From Podarcis vaucheri (Eukaryota), in assembly GCA_965113315.1 (NCBI GenBank), contig OZ220364.1: DNA of 64,000 nucleotides. One strand, written 5' to 3'. Numbering within the stretch: position 1 is the stretch's first letter; each line of letters begins with the position of its first letter. The notes below the pieces were generated by a model, which was not told the origin of the DNA, ran no database searches, and saw nothing but the letters and a program-made list of their open reading frames with translations. The position numbers and the translations under genes are program-made. Shown in pieces: positions 2,973 through 59,997 of this stretch.

Positions 2973-3086
<114 letters not shown>

Positions 3087-13791: not shown

Positions 13792-14313
13792 AATGCAATC
13801 AAATTCAGCTCTAAGTAAAATGGGTTGTGATGGTGTCTTTTAGCATTGGATCATACTTTCAGCCAACACTGAAATAAAGTAGAAGCAGCACTTTCCTTCT
13901 ACCATACAGATGCAATAGCTCTGTATTTTGACTACATAAGGATTGCACACTTGGAGAATGGTTTGCTCTGAGCTGCACTCAGACCTAGTTCATATGATTC
14001 TTCCCTTGTTTTTTCAAGGAGGAGAATCACACAATTGGCAGTTTGCCCAGGGGGTTGGTTCGCTGCATAGCATCTCTACTGGAGAGGGAAGGTCCTCAGG
14101 CTACTCTTCCCACCACACTTTCACCTCACACATGTGTGAACTGGGGTTTCCTTATACAGTAGTATACGTTCTAGTGATAGCTTTTTTGGGGGGTGTAGGA
14201 TTGAAAGCTAACTTTGGTGTACAGATACAGATGGGTAGCCGTGTTGGTCTGCCATAGTCCAAATAAAAAAATTCCTTCCTGTAGCACCTTAAAGACCAAC
14301 TAAGTTAGTTCTT

Positions 14314-14422
14314 GGTATAAGCTTTCGTGTGCATGCACACTTCTTCAGATACCTTCCTTAAAGACAAACTAAGTTAGTTCTTGGTATAAGCTTTCGTGTG
14401 CATGCACACTTCTTCAGATACC
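14314..14422 (-). ncRNA. Two tandem minimal type I hammerhead ribozyme motifs (14314-14353 and 14383-14422)
   Basis: Each reads GGUAU-CUGAAGA-A-GUGUG(CAUG)CACAC-GAA-AGCU-U-AUACC on the minus strand: 5-bp stem I, core, stem II, palindromic AGCU stem III. Confidence 0.7.
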
Positions 14423-14430
14423 TTCAGACA

Positions 14431-14468
14431 TATCTGAAGAAGTGTGCATGCACACGAAAGCTTATACC
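14431..14468 (+). ncRNA. Third minimal hammerhead motif, sense to COX10, with stem I shortened to 3 bp
   Basis: TAT-CTGAAGA-A-GTGTGCATGCACAC-GAAAGCTT-ATACC. Confidence 0.55.
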
Positions 14469-17400
14469 AAGAACTAACTTAGTTGGTCTTTAAGGTGCTA
14501 CAGGAAGGAATTTTTTTATTTGGACTTTGGTGTACAGATTAGAAGAAGTTCTTTCTGTTCCATCATTCCAATCCTTAAATTTCTTTGTAGTTCCCTGCCT
14601 TATGCTCACTCACTATCCTAATAAAAAAAAATTCATGAAAATGTATTGATCCAGCACTGAATTATGTAAGCTTGAAAAATAGACCGGTCTGTTTTCAGAA
14701 AACAAAGTGACTACTTTAAACCTAGCTGATTTGTTTATAGTGCTGCTCAAGTCACTAATTCTGAGCAGAGGAGATGGAACATCTGCAACTCACATTGGTT
14801 AGGATCTGGGAAAGCTAATTGCCTCCAATTTGGTTAAAATACAGTGTCAATTACATTTTCAAACAACAGCTTCTATACTCTCTGTTGACAGCAAAGCTGG
14901 GGGGCCATCCATTGAGCTATTTCCTTGCTTCAAAAAAAGTAAATTCACACAGCTATGTGATATTTTACCGAAGCCAATATTTATTCCTTTGCAAATAAGT
15001 AGACTTGCTGCAACTGAAGTAAAATAGCTTGGAGTAGAAATGCCATCTCGAGGGTCCAAGAGACAGTTTGTTTCTCCAAACCTTTTCATTCAGATTGGAT
15101 CACTAAAAAAAATAAATCAAAGTTATTTAAATAATTGTGTGGGGTTTTTTTTTAAGATTCTAAGTTTTTGATTAATGTATTTCCTGAAAAACATGCATAC
15201 TGATAGGTTGCTGAAACACAGGTTAACTATTTATACAATAACCAATATAATACATAATGATAATAATACTTTATGTCAGAAATCTGATTTAAGATTTGAG
15301 TGCTGAGTTTAGTATCCTTTGTTAAATTAGTAATTTTTCTCTAGCCAGATTATCATTAGTATACTAGACAATTTTTAAACATGCCTGCTAAACATGTCTA
15401 TACATTAGACATTCCTTATCTCAGCACAGCAGATGAATGACTGGGAAGGAGAAAAGCTACCACAATTTCCTCTTTGGTAGTCTGCACATCTGCTATTTCA
15501 TGCTAAATCATATTTGGGTTATTGTTATGTGCCATCCATGAATTGTCTGCAAGTTAATAGAAATGCACCATTGTGTTGGGATATTCGGCCTACTGTCCAT
15601 TCTCCATCTCTCTCCAACAATCAAGATCAATCAAGACCACCTTCAAGTTATTACTGATGAGTCTGGATTGCCATGTAGACAAAAAGAGATATTAGCAGCT
15701 CAAGAGTGCTTCTTTTCTAAGCCTGTGCACATCAAAGACAACTCTGCCTTTTCAGACAATTGGTTGTTAAATCCTTTTATCAGGAGATAAAATATTATGA
15801 TGACCGTCAAAATTCCTTACTTAAGTGCTTTTAAACATGGAGCCATTTATTATGTCCCTATGGAGTTTTAGGAGCTCCACTTTACCACTTGGTAGAACTA
15901 GCCCCCTTCTCAGCTAGAAGGATGTATGCAATTATCAATATCTTTGTTGTATGTTTGTACTATTTCGGGAGTTTACAACCCAGCTTAAAATTTTTAGCAA
16001 AAGCATTTTAGATGTAGTTATTTAGAGATAGTTGTATAGAGATAATTTAGAAGGATATTCTTCTGAATTTCCTCATTACCCCTGCCCACTCCCTGCCACC
16101 CAAGCAGTTTTCAAAATTATATATCCACACACTAACTTTCAGGTATTCCACAGGCTGCCTAGGACATTTTTTTCCCTGCAGTGTAAGGTCTGATTGAACT
16201 CTAACCCAAAATATATTCCAAAATATTTTTTTCATGTGGTTATAAATATTTGCAGCCAGCATGAAGTAGCTGATGGTAAAGTACAATGAAAGAAGGGGAA
16301 CATTGTCCTAAAAGAGAAATCAAAGGGGGAAAGAGTTGCTTGAGATACTTTTTCTAGCTGTCCTCAATCTCTTATCCGTTTTATAAGTGTGTTTTACCTC
16401 TAATGCCTGAGGATCTTAATAATTCTACATTTAATACATTAGAAACTCAAAAGTCTGTACAGATTACAACAATGGCAGATTTGGGGTTCTTTATTTGCCT
16501 TACTATTGCCTGGTGGCTTGAAGCCAAATATTATAGCTGAAATGCTCAGCATTCTGCCAAGAACTTGCATAGAGGGCTTTCTGCTGCATCTTGCCCTTCT
16601 TGACCTGGCACCAACTACTATGTTGAGAAGATTAATACAACTCTAGATGTCCAAGAGCAGGCATACCCCTAATTTATTTATTTCTAACGTAGAGAGAGAG
16701 TTAAATAATTCATGGAAAAGAGTTGACAGGATTTCTCATTTTTGTGCCTCCCTCCAAGGGCAGCACCATCTCTCAGGCTTTAGGCATGAGTGGCCGAGAG
16801 GAACTCCTTCTCCCAGTGCCCTGGATTGATGGGAGGAAGCCTGAGTTCTCAATTAAAGCTGTAATTTAGTTTTGCATTTCAATTTTAAAACCAAACAGCC
16901 TCCAGTCTTTTTCATGAGTCATGAACCTTTTTGCATGAGCGAGTGAGGAAATAAGTGAATATGCATATTAGTATTTTTTCTTCCTCATGTAATGCCCACT
17001 TTGTTTGCTTAAATGAGTGCCCTTTTACTTCATTACACTGTTGGTTAATGTAATTCTGTGTCTTTGCAAGAGCAGATCTCATCATCAGTTTTCCTGCTTG
17101 TTCATAAGCGCTTGAAAGCCAGGGAAAGATGGTGACAAAAAGTGCGACACCAGCTTTCCTGCTTTTAAAGGCTGTAATTGATATTGCCTCTGTGTCCCCC
17201 ATCAAGCAAGAAAAGGTAGCTTTAGCAATAAATCTGTAATCCTTGTGCTTATAGCTTTTTTCTCCCTTTTAATTAGAAGATATATCTCATTAGACAAGAA
17301 GGAAATTTCTGATTAAAACCGGTAATTGAATGTAAAAAGATATTTTTCTCTTTCTGTGTTTAAGCGTTTTGTAGGTGACAAGCACCACATACAGCTTCAT

Positions 17401-23308: not shown

Positions 23309-26123
23309 GGGACATATGTTCATAATTTGATTTCTGGAATAGAGATGTCCTTTTAACCAATAGTGTCCACGATGCAGAAAGCAGCTCTCAAGGTAGACTG
23401 CTGATTACTGCTATGGCTTTGGGTATGTTCTATGTTCTAAAATGTGCAGTGTTTTCTGTGCTTCCTTTCTTGAAGTGAAGTTTAAAAAATGTAGGGTGGC
23501 ATATGCTGCACTCTGGCTCATCTGTATGTAGCTTATGGAGGGCCCTGGCTTGGTAACTGTGAAAAGCAAGTGAAATAACCTGTTCTGTAAAGTAACAATA
23601 TTCTCTGTCTTCAGCAGAAGCTGGTTGTGTGCCCTTGGGCACTCTTGAGGTGGTGGTTCAGAGCACTGCCAAAGTCAAGGCAGCTGTGCAAATTTTCATG
23701 GAATTTACTTGTTTTGTGAATATGAGCTGGCTTTGACAGCCTTTTGCCTTACAGGGTGGTACATCAAGCACACCACGTATATCCTGTTCATACCTCATCA
23801 AAGTTTTCTCCTAACTCCCGATTACACCCACCCACCCCTAGTGATTTTAGAAATGGATAAAACACACCAGCTGGATCATCAGGTCCCAGGCTATGTCTGC
23901 AAACAGGAGAAAAAATCTGCTTATGACTTGTCAACAGAGCAGATGTTACACTAAGGGAAATGGAACATATTGTCTCCCGTGGGATCTGTCACTGTCACAC
24001 AGGTACTCTTCAGAGTGTGACTGCATTGAATTTCCAAGGGCGGGTGGGGGAAACGTGCCCCTGTTTTTCTATTGCACATTGTGAAAAAAGGTCTCCCCTT
24101 CTGGAATTAAATATTGCAGAGTCAATACTGCAGAATATTGTTTCCTGGATGAAAGAAGCCTTTCCAAATTCCAGATGCAAACATCTAGTCCATGTAGAAA
24201 GTGCTTCAAGTTTTACATCTCCCTAGCATGAACATGGCTTTTAATATTAGGCCTTTAGCTGTACCTCACCTATTGCAATAGCAAAGGATATTTGCACATC
24301 ACGGCTTCTGGGGTCAATTTAGTAATATGGAAAATTGGTAAATAACAGCCAGCCCTATTACAGGCAAGTAGTTGTGTTTTTCCATAAAAATCTCTTAAGC
24401 CCTATAATATTGGCTTTCACAGAGTGTTCTACCAGCTCCTCAAAGAGTTGACACTTGACTTATTTTTATGTCTCATGAAGTGGTGCAAACCTAAGAAAGG
24501 CATGTCCAGAGTGTAAATAGATATAAAAAATATAATTCATATTTTTAAAAGCAAGTTCTGCATTCACAAGACAAGATTTTCCATTTGGATTTTAATGTTT
24601 TCATGTTCGCTTAGTTTGGAGAGATTCTTTTGGAGCTCATCACAATCCCTTTTTGTTTTAAACACCGTGAACAATTTGGTATCACCAAACATGGCTACTC
24701 ACTCCTAACTCTAGATCACATTAATCCATGAAAATTGAAAAGGGGGGAACTTACTGTTATCGTCTGCTTCAAAAAAAAAAAAAGTTTCAGAAGTGTCACT
24801 GAACAATTGAGGAACATGCTTTTAAAAAATGTTTCAGTGTCCTGTTTTTGCTATTTTCTGTTTCAACAATGTTCAAAGTACAGCATCCTTTATAGCTCAT
24901 CTGAAGTGGTAACAAAATTCCTGTCTTTTTCTCTTCCCTTCCCCCTGAACTTCATCATCAGTACATTCAGCTATCTTTACACAGATACTTGAGCCAAGTG
25001 ATCAAGTGATGAGCTTGCCTCCATTTCCAGGGTGCTAGATTCACATGACAAAACTCTGTCACTTCTTAACTAATGTTGTTGTGTAAATATAGGTCCAAGT
25101 GTTACAAGATAGGTGCTTGAATGGGTTCACTGAAAGCTGCATGTATTCAAAAGAACATTTTTTCTTGGCTCAGAAGCTTGTGAGAAAAATCTGATAAACA
25201 TTGCATTCCACTAAATTAAATCGGCAAAATCCACAATTGGGTTTGTAAAGCTGGTAAAATCATGTTCCAGCTTATCAAATTGTTGGCCTGGTCCATTTAA
25301 TTAAAAGTTAAATTGAAGGCAGACATTTATTCCTTCTCCGCATTCTAACACGATCCGTGCACATCCATGCTTAGGCTTATTTTGCAATTGTGTATAAAAC
25401 ACTATGAGGTGACTGGTCTGTGTGGGGCTATAAAAATCTACACCAAACATTTAGATGCTTTATTAAAAATAGTTTCTTCCCCACTGTCAAGAGTTGACGT
25501 AGCCAGATCTGGAACTTTAGTGAAACCCATAGTTTAAGCTTCTAGGATTCCGATAAATTCTGCTAAATCAGGGCAATAAATTTTGAACACAAATTTCTGT
25601 TGAAAGTATTACATTGTGTAATTAAAGCTTGGGTAATATGTAGGCATGTTTCTTTCACTATGCTATAAACAATGTAATAGTTGTTGTGTGTCTGTCTCTA
25701 GGTGAATGTTTAGCTTTAACATGCCTAATGGCAACTTGCATACACACCTGCCTAAATTCCCAGGAAGGGAAGCTCCGCTGCCTATATAGCTTCCTCAAAT
25801 TCCCTCAACATCCCCTGGCAGGAGCGAGAAGACAAAAACTAAGTCAAGACCAGTCTGAATTGGACTGCACCTGACCTGTTTTGCCTGCTGGTCAAATTTG
25901 CTGATTGTTCTCTGTACACCAGTGAAGAAGTTATGCTCTAGTAGGTGTTTGCTAAATGTACATTTATTCTGTGGTTATCACTGTTGCCCGATTTAAGATT
26001 TCTTAATAAAAAAGAATTATCAGGAAAGCATTGGATAAAAAGGTAACAGTAATAAAAATCTGCCCTCAGATCCTTTCACTAACATATTTTTACATTTTCT
26101 TGTTTCTTTCTTTTTTTTTACAG

Positions 26124-26356
26124 CCCTTTGCTTGCTGTGTCTTTTGCTGCCTCCTGTGCTGTTCCAGGAATAGCTCTGCTCACCTTCGGAGTAAATCCTC
26201 TTACTGCAGCCCTGGGAGCCTTCAACATCATCCTGTACACATGCTGTTACACACCGCTGAAAAGAATTAGCATTGTCAATACATGGGTAGGAGCTGTGGT
26301 TGGTGCTATTCCCCCAATTATGGGTTGGACAGCAGCAACCGGCAGTCTGGATGCAG
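26124..26356 (+). CDS. COX10: COX10 internal coding exon, orthologous to human exon 6
   Basis: T-rich tract + CAG acceptor (26121-26123). 233-bp exon; the phase-2 join AG|C gives Ser. Translates [77 protein letters not shown]. Donor G|GTGAG at 26357. Confidence 0.98.
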
Positions 26357-29300
26357 GTGAGAATTACTCTGGGGGGGAAATGGAACCATGAAGAGGAAGA
26401 GAATTGAGTGTCTTCCTCTTAGGGCCAATTGAATGACTTCATTCCCAATAGAGAGATGTACTTTTAACCAATGCCTATTAAGTATCATTCGCATTATCTA
26501 GGATCTGCATATTTCACTGTGTACTGCATGACTCTCTCTTCCACTGACTTGGCATTTTGCAGTAAAAAAACCCAAGACTGTCTTAGGTTCAGGACCCATT
26601 CAGTTCAGTCATAGGCCAACAGGGGTGTGTAGACTGCATAATGACTTGCCTACCTGGTGCAAAGGTTGTAGAAGTCACGTTTCATCTAGTTAGACTGGTA
26701 GAGACCGTCAGAGTGAAGATGACAGTCATGGTGCACGTCAGCACCAGTGAAATGGGGAAATGTAGTTGTGCAGTATTGGAAGCAAACTTTAGGTGGGTAA
26801 GCAAGAAGCTGAAATTCAGAATTGCTTCCTCCAGAATTCTACCTGCCCTATTTGCAGTGCCAGGTAGACAGGCAAAGCTGAGGCATTTCAATGCATGCCT
26901 AAGATTGCAGTGTCAAAGGACAGCTTTTGACTTCTTAGACACTGGAGAAGGTTTTGTAATAAGCCAAGCGTATACAAAAGGGACAGGTTCCGCTTGAACC
27001 AAAAAGGAGCCAGGCTACTAGCACTTAGGATCAAAACAATGGCAGAGAGTAGGAATAAATTGACTGTTCTCACAGTGGAGGGATGAGAAAAGTGTGCTCT
27101 ATTAGAACCAGTACTTTTTAACTTGCTCATAATTAAACTTGCATTAGAGCTAAGCAGTGAGGTGGCCAAGTGGTAGAAGCAAAAAAGAGTTCCAGGAGTT
27201 CCAAAATGATCTTTCTTAACTGGATGAACTGGCAATAAAATGACAAGCGCAGTTTAGTGTAAGTCAGCATGAAGTGACTTACATCGGGGGAAAACATTCT
27301 CCTAATTCTCCTAACAACTATCCCTATTCAGCTGCTGAAGACTAAGACTTAAAGGTCTGAAATATGGGGAGCCTGGTTCTGTGCATGTAGGCACAGGATT
27401 CTAAGCCACCCAAGGAGCCCTCAGATCTTTAGGACACAGGGCAGGGCCACAGAGTGTAGCCCTGCTCTCCCCTCTCTTAGTTGTAATCATGTGAAAGGAT
27501 AATGATTAAAGAGAGCTGCTAAGTCAGTCTTAGTGGCCCCCGAATAGCAGTTGCTAGGGAACAATTGTCCTGCTTTCAAGCTTTCCATTGGTCCAAAAGT
27601 GAGCTTGTACTCTCCCTCATACTAATAACACTGCAAATGGACAAACTTTGTTGAGATCACAACTTGGGATGGAAGGATTAAAGCTGCAGGTCTCTCCCTG
27701 CACCTATTACTATTTTTTTTTAATTAAAAAAACTTGCCATGCTTCCAAGTGATGCATTTAGTGTTGTGTGCAGTTTGGCCCTCAGGCATATGTAAGTGCA
27801 AGCCTTTATCCTTCTCTCCCTCTTCTGTGCTCACATGCTCTGTGTTTCTACAGGAACTATTCATCACCGAGTTAGCCAAAAGTCAACCAGGATTATGTGA
27901 CTCCTCCTAGTTTGAAGATCAAACATAACCTTCGGTTTTGCAGTGCTCTTGTGATTCTTTTTGCAGTGTGTGTCACGATAGGATCTCAGATTTCTGCAAC
28001 AAGATCAGAGAAATGTTGTGTTAGCTCAGTGGGCCTGCTCCCTTCATTGATGCTGCTGCTTTTGAAGCAAAGGCTACAGAGACCTGAAAATGCAGGATCA
28101 GTCTTAATGAAGCTTTCTGAGGTGACCAGCCTTTTGGGGGGGCATGTTGTATTCTTAGCATTGCAAAGCATTTGTTGTTCTAGGCACAAGTGATCAGAGT
28201 AATAGAAAGGAGAGACAATGTGAACAGATTCAGTTATGAACCAGGGGAACATGGTAGAAAAAATCAAGATGAAAATGCAAGAAGGTCATAACTATAGCCT
28301 TTCTGCAGTGAAGGAAACAAAGAAGTTTAATTCAGATGATTAACTCATATTAGAAGCTGTGTGTCCTCTGTGACATGACTAGTGAATGCTCAACAACCAA
28401 AGCAGGGCTTCTGCTGTACAGTTGTCATGTTCACTTATCTGCACTGTGTTTCTGGCTGCAATTACAAGTCCTGTGGCTTCTGCTGCCTCTCCCTTCCCCT
28501 CTGTTCTCCATCTCACTAAAACCAAACCCAAATTCCTTGAAAATCTCACTGTTAAAAGGTACAGATACCTTGCTAAGCAAATACATGCCGTGTTGGTAAT
28601 ATACACAGATAACTCTGACCATGGAGTTTGGATTATTCCCTAATACAGAATCTGAATTTTATTTTGTTTCTTGATATGGAAAATGCCCAACCCTATCTGT
28701 CTCTCTCCAAGTGTCAGAAACTAGCACCAAATGTTGGCTTCCGCAAGCAGGACTTGTTAGTTGAATCTAGGCCAATTATACATGTTATTTATATACATAA
28801 CTCTGAGTAGTTATGGCAGTGCTCATGAAGTTATTACAGTAAGTGCCACACTTTTAGTATTTGGGAGGAGGGAGAGGTCCCTGTACTGCATACCCTTGAG
28901 TACCCCCGTGGGGGGGGGAGCACTGGAATAGGTAATAGTGGCCAATCTCAGAAGAAGCTTTTTAGCCCATGTTCTCTCATAATAACTAAGCATTGGATCT
29001 TCTCTGCCCCTTCCCACTCAAAACGCTCAACCATAGGCTTATTTGCAGGAGGGCGGGGGGGGGGGTATCCATGTACAGAAACTATTTCTTTGATTAAAGG
29101 CTCATGCCTGCAGTTGGTTGATAGTTTCATATAGATGTTAGGAATGCCTTTTGGTATGGACAAGCTGAGTATGCCATCTGCTTCCACATCATGTAAGCCA
29201 CATCTCTGGAACCCATTAATGTTTCCTAATTAACTAGCTGAAGCAACCTGGATTTAGGTAGAAGCGTGGGAATACATTTGCACCTTGTTAAAAAGAAGGG

Positions 29301-44614: not shown

Positions 44615-44782
44615 NNNNNNNNNNNNNNNNNNNNNNNNNNNNNNNNNNNNNNNNNNNNNNNNNNNNNNNNNNNNNNNNNNNNNNNNNNNNNNNNNNNNNN
44701 NNNNNNNNNNNNNNNNNNNNNNNNNNNNNNNNNNNNNNNNNNNNNNNNNNNNNNNNNNNNNNNNNNNNNNNNNNNNNNNNNN
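44615..44782. other. Assembly gap (168 N)
   Basis: Run of n. Confidence 1.
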
Positions 44783-46514: not shown

Positions 46515-46640
46515 AAATAATAGAAGGGAACAAAAGGGTCAGCTAGTCCAACCCTCTGCAACGCAGGACTCTTTTGCCCAACATGGGACTCGAACCCACA
46601 ACTCTGAAATGAAGAATCTCATGCTCTACCAACTGAGCTA
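46515..46640 (-). mobile_element. tRNA-Lys-derived SINE with CR1-like 3' tail
   Basis: Minus strand TAGCTCAGTTGGTAGAGCATGAGATTCTT..GTGGGTTCGAGTCCCATGTTGGGC followed by GGGTTGGACTAG..GACC..TCCCTTC. Confidence 0.8.
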
Positions 46641-47718
46641 CATAAGTCGCCATAACTTTTGATGCATCAGTTCCAGTGTAAATAGTTAATGAATACGGAA
46701 AAGATCCATCAGTTTGATTGGCCCAAACATTAAAAGTTCATAAAAGGGCATTGTTCTCTCTGTCTGTCTGGCTAGAGTGAACACACTGTGTATTTGTGCT
46801 CTAAAAAGAGAAATGGAAGTGAAGGACTTTATTTATTTACTTACTTACTTTTCTTCCTTGTTTGATGCAACCACAATTGTTCTCTGTGTCTTTCCATTCC
46901 TCAGCACTGTTTCAGATATTCCAGCCATTCGATTTCTACCTCTTCCCTCGAGCAATGTCCACACTCCATCCATCTCACTAAAAAATAAAAAAATAAAAAG
47001 TTCTTTGACATCCAGCCCACATTTTTTCTTGACTCAACTCTGTCATGTCACTCCTACTCATCTCTCCTTGGAGCACTGGAAAACACTCCTCCCCATTCAA
47101 GCCAAATGGCCTTGAGCCAGCAAAGAACGGTGTTTGCAGAAAGAGGGATTAAAACTTTAGGGGCAGGTCAGGGCAAAAAAAAAAAAAAAAGTATAATGAC
47201 TTCCGGTTTCTTGGGAGAAGAAATGGAGTTGACTGGGTGTTTATGACGGAGAATAAGAGTACACCCCGAACCCACTCAGCCAATGAAACCCAAAGGAGGG
47301 AGTTGTGTTACAGCATGAAAATGATTCCCTTTGGCTGAACATGGCAACATTTCTAAATGAAGTTAGGCCTGATTTACACATTACAGACATAAGACTATGG
47401 AGACTGCTTGAAATTGCTCCACTACTTGGCTGATACAACCACTGAGCTGAAGGAAAAATTAAAATGACAAACACCCTGAAATTCTGATATGAAACTAAAA
47501 GCCGCAAGTGGTGTGGAATGGCCACAGAAATGGGGAAACAAATCCACTCTCTTCATGCATCTCTGTGATGCCCACTTGTTTCTGCTCCCCAAAATGACCA
47601 CATTGCAATGTGCATTGGAACTGGGACCTGTTGGTCACAAAGGGGAAAGCTATTAGTATGCAATTTTCAGTTCAAATGTCCAAAAGGAGTTCTAATGCTA
47701 TAATGAAAATGGAGTATT

Positions 47719-59244: not shown

Positions 59245-59997
<753 letters not shown>

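What the first reader, a model, noticed from the sequence alone, without database searches (positions are those of the whole stretch)
14314..14468. Three hammerhead-ribozyme motifs in a COX10 intron, two in tandem and able to form a dimeric hammerhead
Seen: a 69-bp tandem duplication (units start 14287 and 14356, one mismatch) puts two identical motifs head-to-tail on the minus strand. Each reads GGUAU CUGAAGA A GUGUG-CAUG-CACAC GAA AGCU U AUACC, and a third copy lies on the plus strand. Established: Penelope-like elements carry minimal type I hammerheads whose stem III is a short palindrome, cleaving poorly as monomers but well as dimers; an extra A after the CUGANGA box is tolerated in a natural viroid hammerhead (CChMVd). 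Inference: the local duplication created a cis-dimer (AGCU/AGCU stem III, cleavage after CUU). It could cut antisense transcripts at two sites and release a 69-nt unit, resembling a nascent retrozyme or satellite-type monomer that could circularise.
Basis: partly seen in the sequence, partly recalled or inferred. Interest (0 to 1): 0.85.

Follow-up and report, generated by a model that had tools for sequence, protein, structure and literature searches.

The report
Young Penelope insertion carrying hammerhead motifs
The hammerhead-ribozyme motifs are real, but they are the standard minimal hammerheads of a hugely abundant lizard Penelope-like retroelement, sitting in one very recent fold-back insertion in a COX10 intron, which is a known kind of element and not a new ribozyme system.

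Summary
The sequence observation holds. There is a 69-bp tandem repeat (14287-14355 / 14356-14424, one mismatch). The same 35-nt hammerhead core occurs three times: twice on the minus strand and once on the plus strand. None is expected by chance.

The motifs are not a local invention. All three lie in one 297-bp insertion (14227-14523) flanked by a perfect 16-bp target-site duplication. Contigs from two other samples run straight across an empty site, so the insertion is very young and polymorphic. The element is roughly 10^4-fold over-represented in reads.

The insertion has two arms with their 3' ends pointing outwards. One arm carries the optional tail of about 32 nt and the other lacks it. 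This matches what the Anolis Penelope-like enzyme does in vitro. The motif matches the published minimal hammerhead of Penelope-like elements feature by feature.

The "cis-dimer / nascent retrozyme" reading is not supported:
- The third copy has only a 3-bp helix I.
- A 93-bp perfect hairpin sequesters one tandem unit in any full-length transcript.
- The double-hammerhead fold is 18-27 kcal/mol worse than the minimum-energy fold.
- No reads confirm the tandem junction or any cleavage.

This scan has already met the same family at other loci of this genome.

The parts
14211..14226 (.). Left copy of the 16-bp target-site duplication ACTTTGGTGTACAGAT
   Evidence: Perfect direct repeat D3. Empty-site contigs of X6 and X8 keep exactly one copy.
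14227..14523 (.). The 297-bp insertion: two Penelope-type 3'-end fragments head-to-head, with their 3' ends pointing outwards
   Evidence: Contigs of two other samples join 14210 directly to 14524, skipping 313 nt, which equals the insert plus one TSD copy. X1 holds both filled junctions. Depth inside is 1e5-2e6 against 13-108 in the flanks.
14227..14258 (-). Optional AC-rich 'tail' (about 32 nt), present only on the left arm
   Evidence: The left arm runs 32 nt further 3' than the right arm. Heterogeneous loose ends of family copies lie at about 14261-14265 and at 14226. PAc has two RT start sites 30-40 nt apart that define such a tail.
14227..14353 (-). Left arm, 3'-proximal unit: hammerhead plus downstream region plus tail
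   Evidence: Identical over 93 nt to the right arm; inverted repeat I1.
14314..14353 (-). Complete min-hammerhead 'b' (GGUAU-CUGAAGA-A-GUGUG/CAUG/CACAC-GAA-AGCU-U|AUACC). Predicted cut on the minus strand between 14319 and 14318.
   Evidence: The G at 14353 (fifth helix-I pair) lies outside the family homology, which ends at 14352.
14356..14424 (-). Second tandem unit (5' unit in sense), ending internally at ...UUUAAGG, with one substitution (14366)
14383..14422 (-). Complete min-hammerhead 'a'. Predicted cut between 14388 and 14387, 69 nt from the other.
14423..14430 (.). 8-nt spacer at the centre of the fold-back (TTCAGACA)
14431..14523 (+). Right arm: the same element in sense on the + strand, 5'-truncated inside helix I, without the tail. 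It ends with 3-nt microhomology (ACT) to the target.
14431..14468 (+). Third hammerhead core with a 3-bp helix I only (UAU/AUA). The nominal cut lies between 14463 and 14464.
14524..14539 (.). Right copy of the target-site duplication
2973..3086 (+). Open frame holding a COX10 (UbiA family) exon. This is context and fixes the host-gene strand.
   Evidence: Pfam UbiA, profile 41-64, E 3.6e-5; the peptide ...[13 protein letters not shown].
26083..26388 (+). Open frame holding the next COX10 exon (context)
   Evidence: Pfam UbiA, profile 65-140, 74.5 bits, E 1.1e-20.

Best explanation
This is one very recent, still polymorphic insertion of the 3'-terminal piece (hammerhead, downstream region, optional tail) of a highly abundant lizard Penelope-like retroelement (PLE) family into a COX10 intron. 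Inferred mechanism: the element's endonuclease nicked both DNA strands 16 bp apart. Each 3'-OH then primed reverse transcription of element RNA. The left arm started at the distal start site and so carries the tail. The right arm started at the proximal site and so lacks it. The two cDNAs ran inwards, both stopped at the 5' edge of the hammerhead, and were joined head-to-head. On the left arm a second, partial copy was added, most likely by a template switch of the reverse transcriptase, and this gives the 69-bp tandem. The three hammerhead cores are therefore passengers: the family's ordinary minimal hammerhead. In the parent element this motif is thought to process element RNA as a dimer, possibly with help from the element's protein. 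At this locus no specific function is expected. Shown: the insertion, the TSD, the empty site, the abundance, the architecture and the motif features. Inferred: priming on both strands, the template switch, and any ribozyme activity.
For: A 16-bp perfect TSD flanks the insert. Contigs of X6 (2420 nt) and X8 (2056 nt) skip exactly 14211-14523, which is an empty site, while X1 has both filled junctions. Word depth inside the insert is 1e5-2e6 against 13-108 in the flanks in three DNA runs. The arms are 100% identical over 93 nt, their 3' ends point outwards, and one arm is 32 nt longer. The PAc Penelope-like protein cleaves and extends both strands, starts RT at two internal sites and so gives an optional 30-40 bp tail, and PLEs occur as partial tandems (PMC11167929). 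[quoted passage not shown] That motif was found in reptiles, and pairs on opposite strands 100-700 bp apart were reported (PMC4209133). All three copies end at the same template position (14352, 14421, 14431). Other genomic copies show joints at the same position. There is a one-base difference in the extra unit, although the arms are identical.
Against: There is no reverse-transcriptase or GIY-YIG ORF in this window, and no autonomous copy of this family was examined here, so 'Penelope-like' rests on the motif, the architecture and the literature. Both tandem junctions share the four bases CTTC after GATAC. A DNA-level duplication explains this more simply than two independent template switches. 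The tandem junction is not confirmed by independent reads. The target site is not notably AT-rich, unlike the PAc preference.
Confidence: 0.8

Rival explanations
1. The insertion is the same Penelope-type event, but the 69-bp tandem arose afterwards at the DNA level, by replication slippage or repair next to the centre of an unstable perfect palindrome, and not during reverse transcription.
For: Both junctions share CTT(C) after GATAC, which follows trivially if 14287-14355 was simply duplicated. The duplication ends 3 nt from the end of the arm and about 8 nt from the palindrome centre, where hairpin-induced slippage is plausible (inference).
Against: The insertion is so young that the arms are 100% identical and the site is polymorphic, yet the extra unit already differs by one base. 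That fits error-prone RT better than a later DNA duplication followed by a mutation. Partial tandems are the norm for PLEs.
Confidence: 0.25
2. The tandem pair is a working cis double hammerhead that cuts antisense transcripts twice and releases a 69-nt RNA able to circularise, that is, a nascent retrozyme.
For: Two complete min-HHRs lie 69 nt apart on one strand, and a nested double-hammerhead pairing is topologically possible. Vertebrate type-I hammerheads with a short helix III cleave better as dimers (PMC7229834). Retrozymes are now argued to derive from PLE pLTRs, and unit lengths down to 51 bp are reported (bioRxiv 10.64898/2026.07.22.740005).
Against: The double-hammerhead fold scores -17.2 kcal/mol (-26.7 with extra pairs) against an MFE of -44.6, in which the two palindromic helix II segments pair with each other. 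In the whole insert one unit is locked in a perfect hairpin of about 93 bp, at about -185 kcal/mol. The motif has U17, where most of the family has C17. PLE min-HHRs cleave weakly even as dimers or trimers. PAc needs its protein, and no RNA-seq ends map to its cut site. The motifs are antisense to COX10, and no promoter or antisense RNA is known. RNA reads came only from other copies in an organism whose one sampled DNA run shows the empty site, and they showed no pile of starts or ends.
Confidence: 0.04
3. The internal 69-bp tandem, but not the insertion itself, is an assembly artefact of a palindromic high-copy repeat.
For: No independent contig spans 14345-14365; unitigs inside the repeat are only 57-60 nt long. 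X1 holds 0.92 of the sampled words, not all of them.
Against: The two units differ at one base, which collapse or expansion errors do not usually produce. The assembly places both junctions correctly.
Confidence: 0.1

Closest known systems
Minimal hammerhead ribozymes (min-HHR) of Penelope-like elements (Cervera & de la Pena 2014, PMC4209133; Lunse, Weinberg & Breaker 2017, cited in PMC6765202)
   Same: Type-I topology and an intact CUGANGA / GAAA core. One unpaired nucleotide between A9 and G10.1. A G10.1-C11.1 pair. A short helix I. No loop 3, with palindromic 15.2/16.2 (AGCU), so that only a dimer can form helix III. Thousands of dispersed, mostly truncated copies. Pairs on opposite strands a few hundred bp apart. 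Present in reptiles.
   Different: Helix II is 5 bp, whereas 7-8 bp was reported for the Schistosoma families. This copy has U17 while most of its family has C17. The fifth helix-I pair of the two tandem motifs is made by the junction and is not part of the family sequence. Activity was not tested.
PAc (Poseidon of Anolis carolinensis) insertion mechanism (PMC11167929)
   Same: Priming on both strands would give exactly this outward-facing fold-back. The two arms end 32 nt apart in an AC-rich segment, like the two RT start sites that define the optional 'tail'. The hammerhead lies just upstream of the tail region. Partial tandems occur.
   Different: The sequence family is different: the ATG in loop II here opens only a 9-codon frame, so this is not the start of the PAc ORF. 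The target site is not clearly AT-rich. No protein-coding copy was examined here.
Metazoan non-LTR retrozymes (Cervera & de la Pena 2020, PMC7229834; Li, Clavereau & Pollet 2026 preprint)
   Same: Tandem units each carry a type-I hammerhead that works better as a dimer. An evolutionary link to PLE pLTRs has been proposed.
   Different: [quoted passage not shown] Here there are two units of 69 nt at a single polymorphic locus, inside a fold-back, with no RNA evidence.
L1 'twin priming' inversions
   Same: Two cDNAs are primed from the two nicked strands and joined internally, giving an inverted structure flanked by one TSD.
   Different: In L1 twin priming the inverted piece derives from one RNA and yields an inversion with truncation, not a near-perfect palindrome made of the same 3' segment twice.

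Membership tests
PLE minimal hammerhead (min-HHR) | Catalytic core C3-U4-G5-A6-N7-G8-A9 and G12-A13-A14, with A15.1...U16.1 and H17 not G | tested here: met
   CUGAAGA ... GAA-A-G-C-U-U in all three copies.
PLE minimal hammerhead (min-HHR) | [quoted passage not shown] | tested here: met
   CUGAAGA-A-GUGUG...CACAC-GAA. This feature is listed as characteristic in PMC4209133.
PLE minimal hammerhead (min-HHR) | No loop 3; positions 15.2/16.2 palindromic, so that helix III forms only between two copies | tested here: met
   AGCU (inside AAGCUU) directly precedes U17.
PLE minimal hammerhead (min-HHR) | Helix I of 4-5 bp flanking the core | tested here: met
   The two minus-strand copies have 5 bp, of which 4 are family-derived. 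The plus-strand copy has only 3 bp and fails.
PLE minimal hammerhead (min-HHR) | Self-cleavage at H17, as a dimer | not testable with these tools
   Only energy modelling was possible. The double-hammerhead fold is 18-27 kcal/mol above the MFE. No RNA ends were seen at the site in reads from other copies.
Rfam hammerhead families | A score against the curated covariance models | tested here: not met
   No hammerhead hit at the gathering threshold or at E<=10 on 14000-14800. This is expected for a motif without helix III. The only hits were spurious miRNA-hairpin matches to the palindrome.
Penelope-like element insertion | A retrotransposed copy flanked by a target-site duplication, with an empty site elsewhere | tested here: met
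   A 16-bp TSD and empty-site contigs in X6 and X8.
Penelope-like element insertion | Partial-tandem and/or inverted 5'-truncated arrangement, with an optional 30-40 bp 3' tail | tested here: met
   A head-to-head fold-back, a 69-bp partial tandem, and a tail of about 32 nt on one arm only, compared.
Penelope-like element insertion | The sequence is the terminal region of an element that encodes a telomerase-like RT and a GIY-YIG endonuclease | not tested
   There is no such ORF near the site and no other copy in the window. Earlier scan notes report intact PLEs in this genome, but I did not link them to this sequence (one search was blank).
Non-LTR retrozyme | A multi-copy family of tandem units, each bounded by hammerhead cut sites | tested here: inconclusive
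   The window holds one locus with two units. Whether the 69-nt junction exists elsewhere in the genome could not be counted.
Non-LTR retrozyme | Expression as unit-length linear and circular RNA | not testable with these tools
   The only RNA raw reads are from organism D, whose one sampled DNA run (X6) shows the empty site. 556 reads map, all only partly on the stretch and 98% running on into unlike sequence, so they come from other copies, and there are none in the flanks. Standard RNA-seq would also miss a 69-nt RNA.

The most novel reading that the evidence does not exclude
The partial tandem made during (or just after) this insertion is a functional double hammerhead. On antisense transcription it would release and circularise a 69-nt RNA, so that this locus would capture the birth of a retrozyme from a Penelope-like element end.
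Probability: 0.04. Interest if true: 0.6.

Novelty: new member of a known kind. Interest (0 to 1): 0.2.

Why it matters
As a ribozyme finding it matters little. It is one more copy of a motif family that is already described and present in tens of thousands of copies.

It has modest value as a natural record of how Penelope-like elements insert. A single, datable, polymorphic event shows three things together:
- outward-facing arms, as expected if both nicked strands prime reverse transcription;
- both alternative reverse-transcription start sites, seen as the tail on one arm and its absence on the other;
- a partial tandem whose units all end at the 5' edge of the hammerhead.

This agrees in vivo with the 2024 in vitro work on the Anolis element. 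The presence/absence polymorphism indicates that the family is active or was active very recently.

The insertion also places a 93-bp perfect palindrome inside the COX10 pre-mRNA. That is a potential long dsRNA and a fragile DNA site, but this point belongs to a neighbouring finding.

Tried and rejected
- Rfam, whole window at the gathering threshold and 14000-14800 at E<=10: no hammerhead family. The only hits were sub-threshold miRNA-precursor matches caused by the long palindrome, which I rejected as artefacts.
- Chance origin of the motif: rejected. There were 0 hits in 100 shuffles and 0 in 200 simulations.
- Other copies of the element in the window: none (blastn). So no alignment, covariation analysis or covariance model was possible from this window.
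- Evidence of expression or cleavage: the only RNA raw reads are from an organism whose one sampled DNA run shows the empty site, and all mapped reads came from other copies.
- Supplementary alignments of PMC4209133 are not held as text, and Lunse et al. 2017 is not held. I therefore could not compare directly with published reptile min-HHR sequences.
- The search of earlier findings by sequence was blank.
- A circular-RNA, rolling-circle origin of the tandem: considered unlikely. The 69-nt unit contains a junction (UUUAAGG-AAG-GUAUC) that is not contiguous in the family sequence, and the unit boundary is not at the hammerhead cut site.

Full report
**1. What is in the sequence**

The window holds a 69-bp tandem repeat, 14287-14355 and 14356-14424, with one mismatch at 14297 C / 14366 A (TRF; the repeat finder).

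The 35-nt string CTGAAGAAGTGTGCATGCACACGAAAGCTTATACC occurs exactly three times: 14314-14348 (-), 14383-14417 (-) and 14434-14468 (+). It occurred zero times in 100 dinucleotide shuffles.

I wrote a descriptor for a minimal type-I hammerhead. It requires:
- a CUGANGA box, with an optional extra base after it;
- helix II of at least 4 bp;
- GAAA;
- complementary 15.2/16.2;
- U16.1 and H17;
- helix I of at least 4 bp.

The descriptor finds exactly these two minus-strand motifs in the 64-kb window. It finds none in 200 Markov-2 simulated windows.

The plus-strand copy has the same core, but its 5' flank is CAUAU and not GGUAU. Helix I is therefore only 3 bp, and the copy fails the descriptor.

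Rfam gives no hammerhead hit at the gathering threshold or at E<=10. It gives only sub-threshold miRNA-hairpin matches to the palindrome. This is what one expects of a hammerhead without helix III.

**2. Host gene**

Two frames on the + strand carry UbiA-family (COX10) exon sequence:
- 2973-3086, Pfam UbiA profile positions 41-64;
- 26083-26388, profile positions 65-140, E 1e-20.

The site therefore lies in the COX10 intron between two consecutive exons. The two complete motifs are antisense to the pre-mRNA, and the truncated third copy is in sense.

**3. The motifs are part of one insertion**

A perfect 16-bp direct repeat, ACTTTGGTGTACAGAT, sits at 14211-14226 and 14524-14539. The 297 bp between the two copies form an inverted repeat. 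Oriented as element sense, the left arm (minus strand) and the right arm (plus strand, 14431-14523) are 100% identical over 93 nt. Their 5' ends meet at the centre across an 8-nt spacer, and their 3' ends face the duplicated target.

Public data settle the nature of the repeat:
- A 2420-nt contig of run X6 (organism D) and a 2056-nt contig of run X8 (organism A, a different sample) both run from 14210 directly into 14524. They skip 313 nt, which equals the insert plus one copy of the 16-mer. This is an empty site.
- Run X1 (organism A, possibly the source sample) has contigs across both filled junctions, 14025-14250 and 14497-14850.
- The other DNA runs listed hold the same share of words (0.70-0.73) as the two empty-site runs. 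This suggests they lack the insertion too, but I did not lay them.

So the 16-mer is a target-site duplication. The whole 297 bp arrived as one event, and the insertion is very young and polymorphic.

**4. The element is a high-copy family**

Summed word depth inside the insert is 1e5-2e6, against 13-108 in the flanks, in all three DNA runs. The tool warns that this is not a copy number, but the difference is about four orders of magnitude.

At hammerhead position 17 (14319, 14388, 14463), 53-91% of the family depth, depending on run and copy, carries C. This copy carries U, a variant seen in 37-47% of the depth in run X1. One contig shows the sequence GAAAGCUCAUACC directly.

Family homology continues 5' of the hammerhead in other copies. 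At this locus it stops at 14352 and 14421. Hence the fifth helix-I pair (the G at 14353 and 14422) is made by the junctions and is not a family feature.

Loose ends of other copies are heterogeneous at about 14261-14265 and at 14226. This is consistent with two classes of 3' end.

**5. Comparison with the literature**

Cervera and de la Pena (PMC4209133) defined the min-HHR of Penelope-like elements (PLEs). Its features are:
- a short helix I of 4-5 bp;
- a conserved G10.1-C11.1 pair;
- palindromic 15.2-16.2 with no loop 3;
- massive dispersal as single truncated copies;
- pairs on opposite strands 100-700 bp apart;
- presence in reptiles;
- no activity as a monomer and only weak activity as dimers or trimers.

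The motif here meets every sequence criterion.

The biochemical study of the Anolis element PAc (PMC11167929) reports the following:
- the protein nicks and extends both DNA strands;
- reverse transcription starts internally, at two sites in an AC-rich region, and this explains an optional 30-40 bp "tail";
- PLEs sit in tandem or partial tandem;
- the hammerhead needs the protein to cleave;
- cleavage is not needed for insertion;
- no RNA-seq ends map to the cut site.

The present insertion fits this work closely. The arms face outwards, as priming on both strands would produce. The left arm ends with an AC-rich tail of about 32 nt (14227-14258), which the right arm lacks. There is also a partial tandem.

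I did not see an RT/GIY-YIG ORF of this family. The label "Penelope-like" therefore rests on the motif, the architecture and the literature. Earlier notes of this scan report intact PLEs and other fold-back or partial-tandem copies in the same lizard genome. I treated those notes as leads only.

**6. Origin of the 69-bp tandem**

All three copies end at the same template position: 14352, 14421 and 14431. Other genomic copies show joints at that position. This suggests a defined 5' end of the template RNA, or a stop or jump point of the reverse transcriptase at the 5' edge of the hammerhead.

The extra unit ends internally at ...UUUAAGG and is joined through AAG to GUAUC. This junction is not contiguous family sequence and does not lie at the ribozyme cut site. 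That argues against copying of a cleaved and ligated 69-nt circle.

The extra unit differs by one base from the other two copies, which are identical to each other. In so young an insertion, this fits an error-prone template switch better than a later DNA duplication followed by a mutation.

On the other hand, both junctions share CTT(C) after GATAC, which a simple DNA duplication explains most economically. My odds are about 0.5 for an origin during reverse transcription, 0.25 for later DNA slippage next to the palindrome centre, and 0.1 for an assembly artefact. No independent contig crosses the junction.

**7. Could the pair act as a cis double hammerhead?**

The pairing is topologically possible without a pseudoknot: helix I of a-5' with b-3', helix III of AGCU with AGCU, and helix I of a-3' with b-5'.

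In the isolated 136-nt dimer this structure scores -17.2 kcal/mol, or -26.7 if further pairs are allowed. The minimum-energy fold scores -44.6 kcal/mol. In that fold the two palindromic helix II segments (GUGUGCAUGCACAC) pair with each other.

In a transcript of the whole insert, on either strand, the arms form a perfect hairpin of about 93 bp at about -185 kcal/mol. This hairpin takes up one of the two tandem units and leaves the other as a monomer. In an antisense transcript the complement of the third copy is made first, so it is already available to pair with the first unit as that unit emerges.

The cut-site triplet is CUU. From established hammerhead enzymology (the NUH rule) it is allowed but weak, and most of the family has CUC.

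Co-transcriptional folding could still give some active dimer, so activity is not excluded. But nothing makes this locus more competent than any other pair of family copies, which could also dimerise in trans.

**8. RNA evidence**

The only RNA raw reads available are from organism D, whose one sampled DNA run (X6) shows the empty site at this locus. In that run:
- 556 reads touch the stretch;
- all lie only partly on it, and 98% run on into unlike sequence, so they come from other copies;
- they fall on both strands;
- none fall in the flanks;
- there is no pile-up of starts or ends.

A standard library would in any case lose a 69-nt RNA. Expression of this locus is therefore untested.

**9. 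Verdict**

The identification as a Penelope-type dimer-dependent hammerhead is right. The special reading, a local duplication creating a nascent retrozyme, is not supported.

The feature is a new member of a known kind. Its modest interest is as a natural, datable record of PLE integration that shows priming on both strands, both RT start sites and a partial tandem in one event, and as evidence that the family has been active very recently.

Noticed in passing
window 14221-14232: The last 6 bases of the left TSD copy (ACAGAT) are repeated as the first 6 bases of the insert, which is the end of the tail in antisense. At the right junction 3 bases (ACT) are shared between the element and the target. 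These may be priming microhomology or slippage at the nick.
   Followed up: partly
window 14259-14351 with 14431-14523: A 93-bp perfect inverted repeat lies inside the COX10 pre-mRNA, with a predicted hairpin of about -185 kcal/mol on either strand. It is a potential long dsRNA (a possible substrate for editing, Dicer or innate sensing) and a fragile DNA palindrome. Another note of the scan (s1-856333) covers the same point.
   Followed up: partly
window 14327-14340, 14396-14409, 14442-14455: Helix II plus its loop is itself a 14-nt perfect palindrome (GUGUGCAUGCACAC). In a dimer the minimum-energy fold pairs the two helix II segments with each other and does not form hammerheads. This could be a second dimerisation interface of the element RNA, or it could simply compete with catalysis.
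   Followed up: partly
window 14319, 14388, 14463: This copy has U at hammerhead position 17, whereas 53-91% of the family depth (depending on run and copy) has C. The U17 form is a sizeable subfamily (37-47% of depth in run X1) and not a private mutation.
   Followed up: partly
window 46575-46647 (-): A tRNA-like sequence scores 40.1 bits against Rfam tRNA but has several mismatched acceptor-stem pairs. It is probably the head of a tRNA-derived SINE and not a working tRNA gene.
   Followed up: no
window 59245-59997 (+): A GC-rich open frame of 251 codons ends in a sulfotransferase-domain start (Pfam Sulfotransfer_1, E 3.4e-5). It is probably the first exon of a heparan-sulfate 3-O-sulfotransferase-like gene downstream of COX10, the neighbour that, from memory, lies next to COX10 in mammals.
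   Followed up: partly
window 44615-44782: A run of 168 N (assembly gap or masked stretch). It was left untouched.
   Followed up: no
window 14352 / 14421 (family-wide): Several contigs from other genomic copies show joints in which an antisense arm ends at, or within 3 nt of, the position equivalent to 14352 and then continues into a sense arm at varied positions. This suggests a recurrent stop or switch point at the 5' edge of the hammerhead in fold-back insertions of this family.
   Followed up: no
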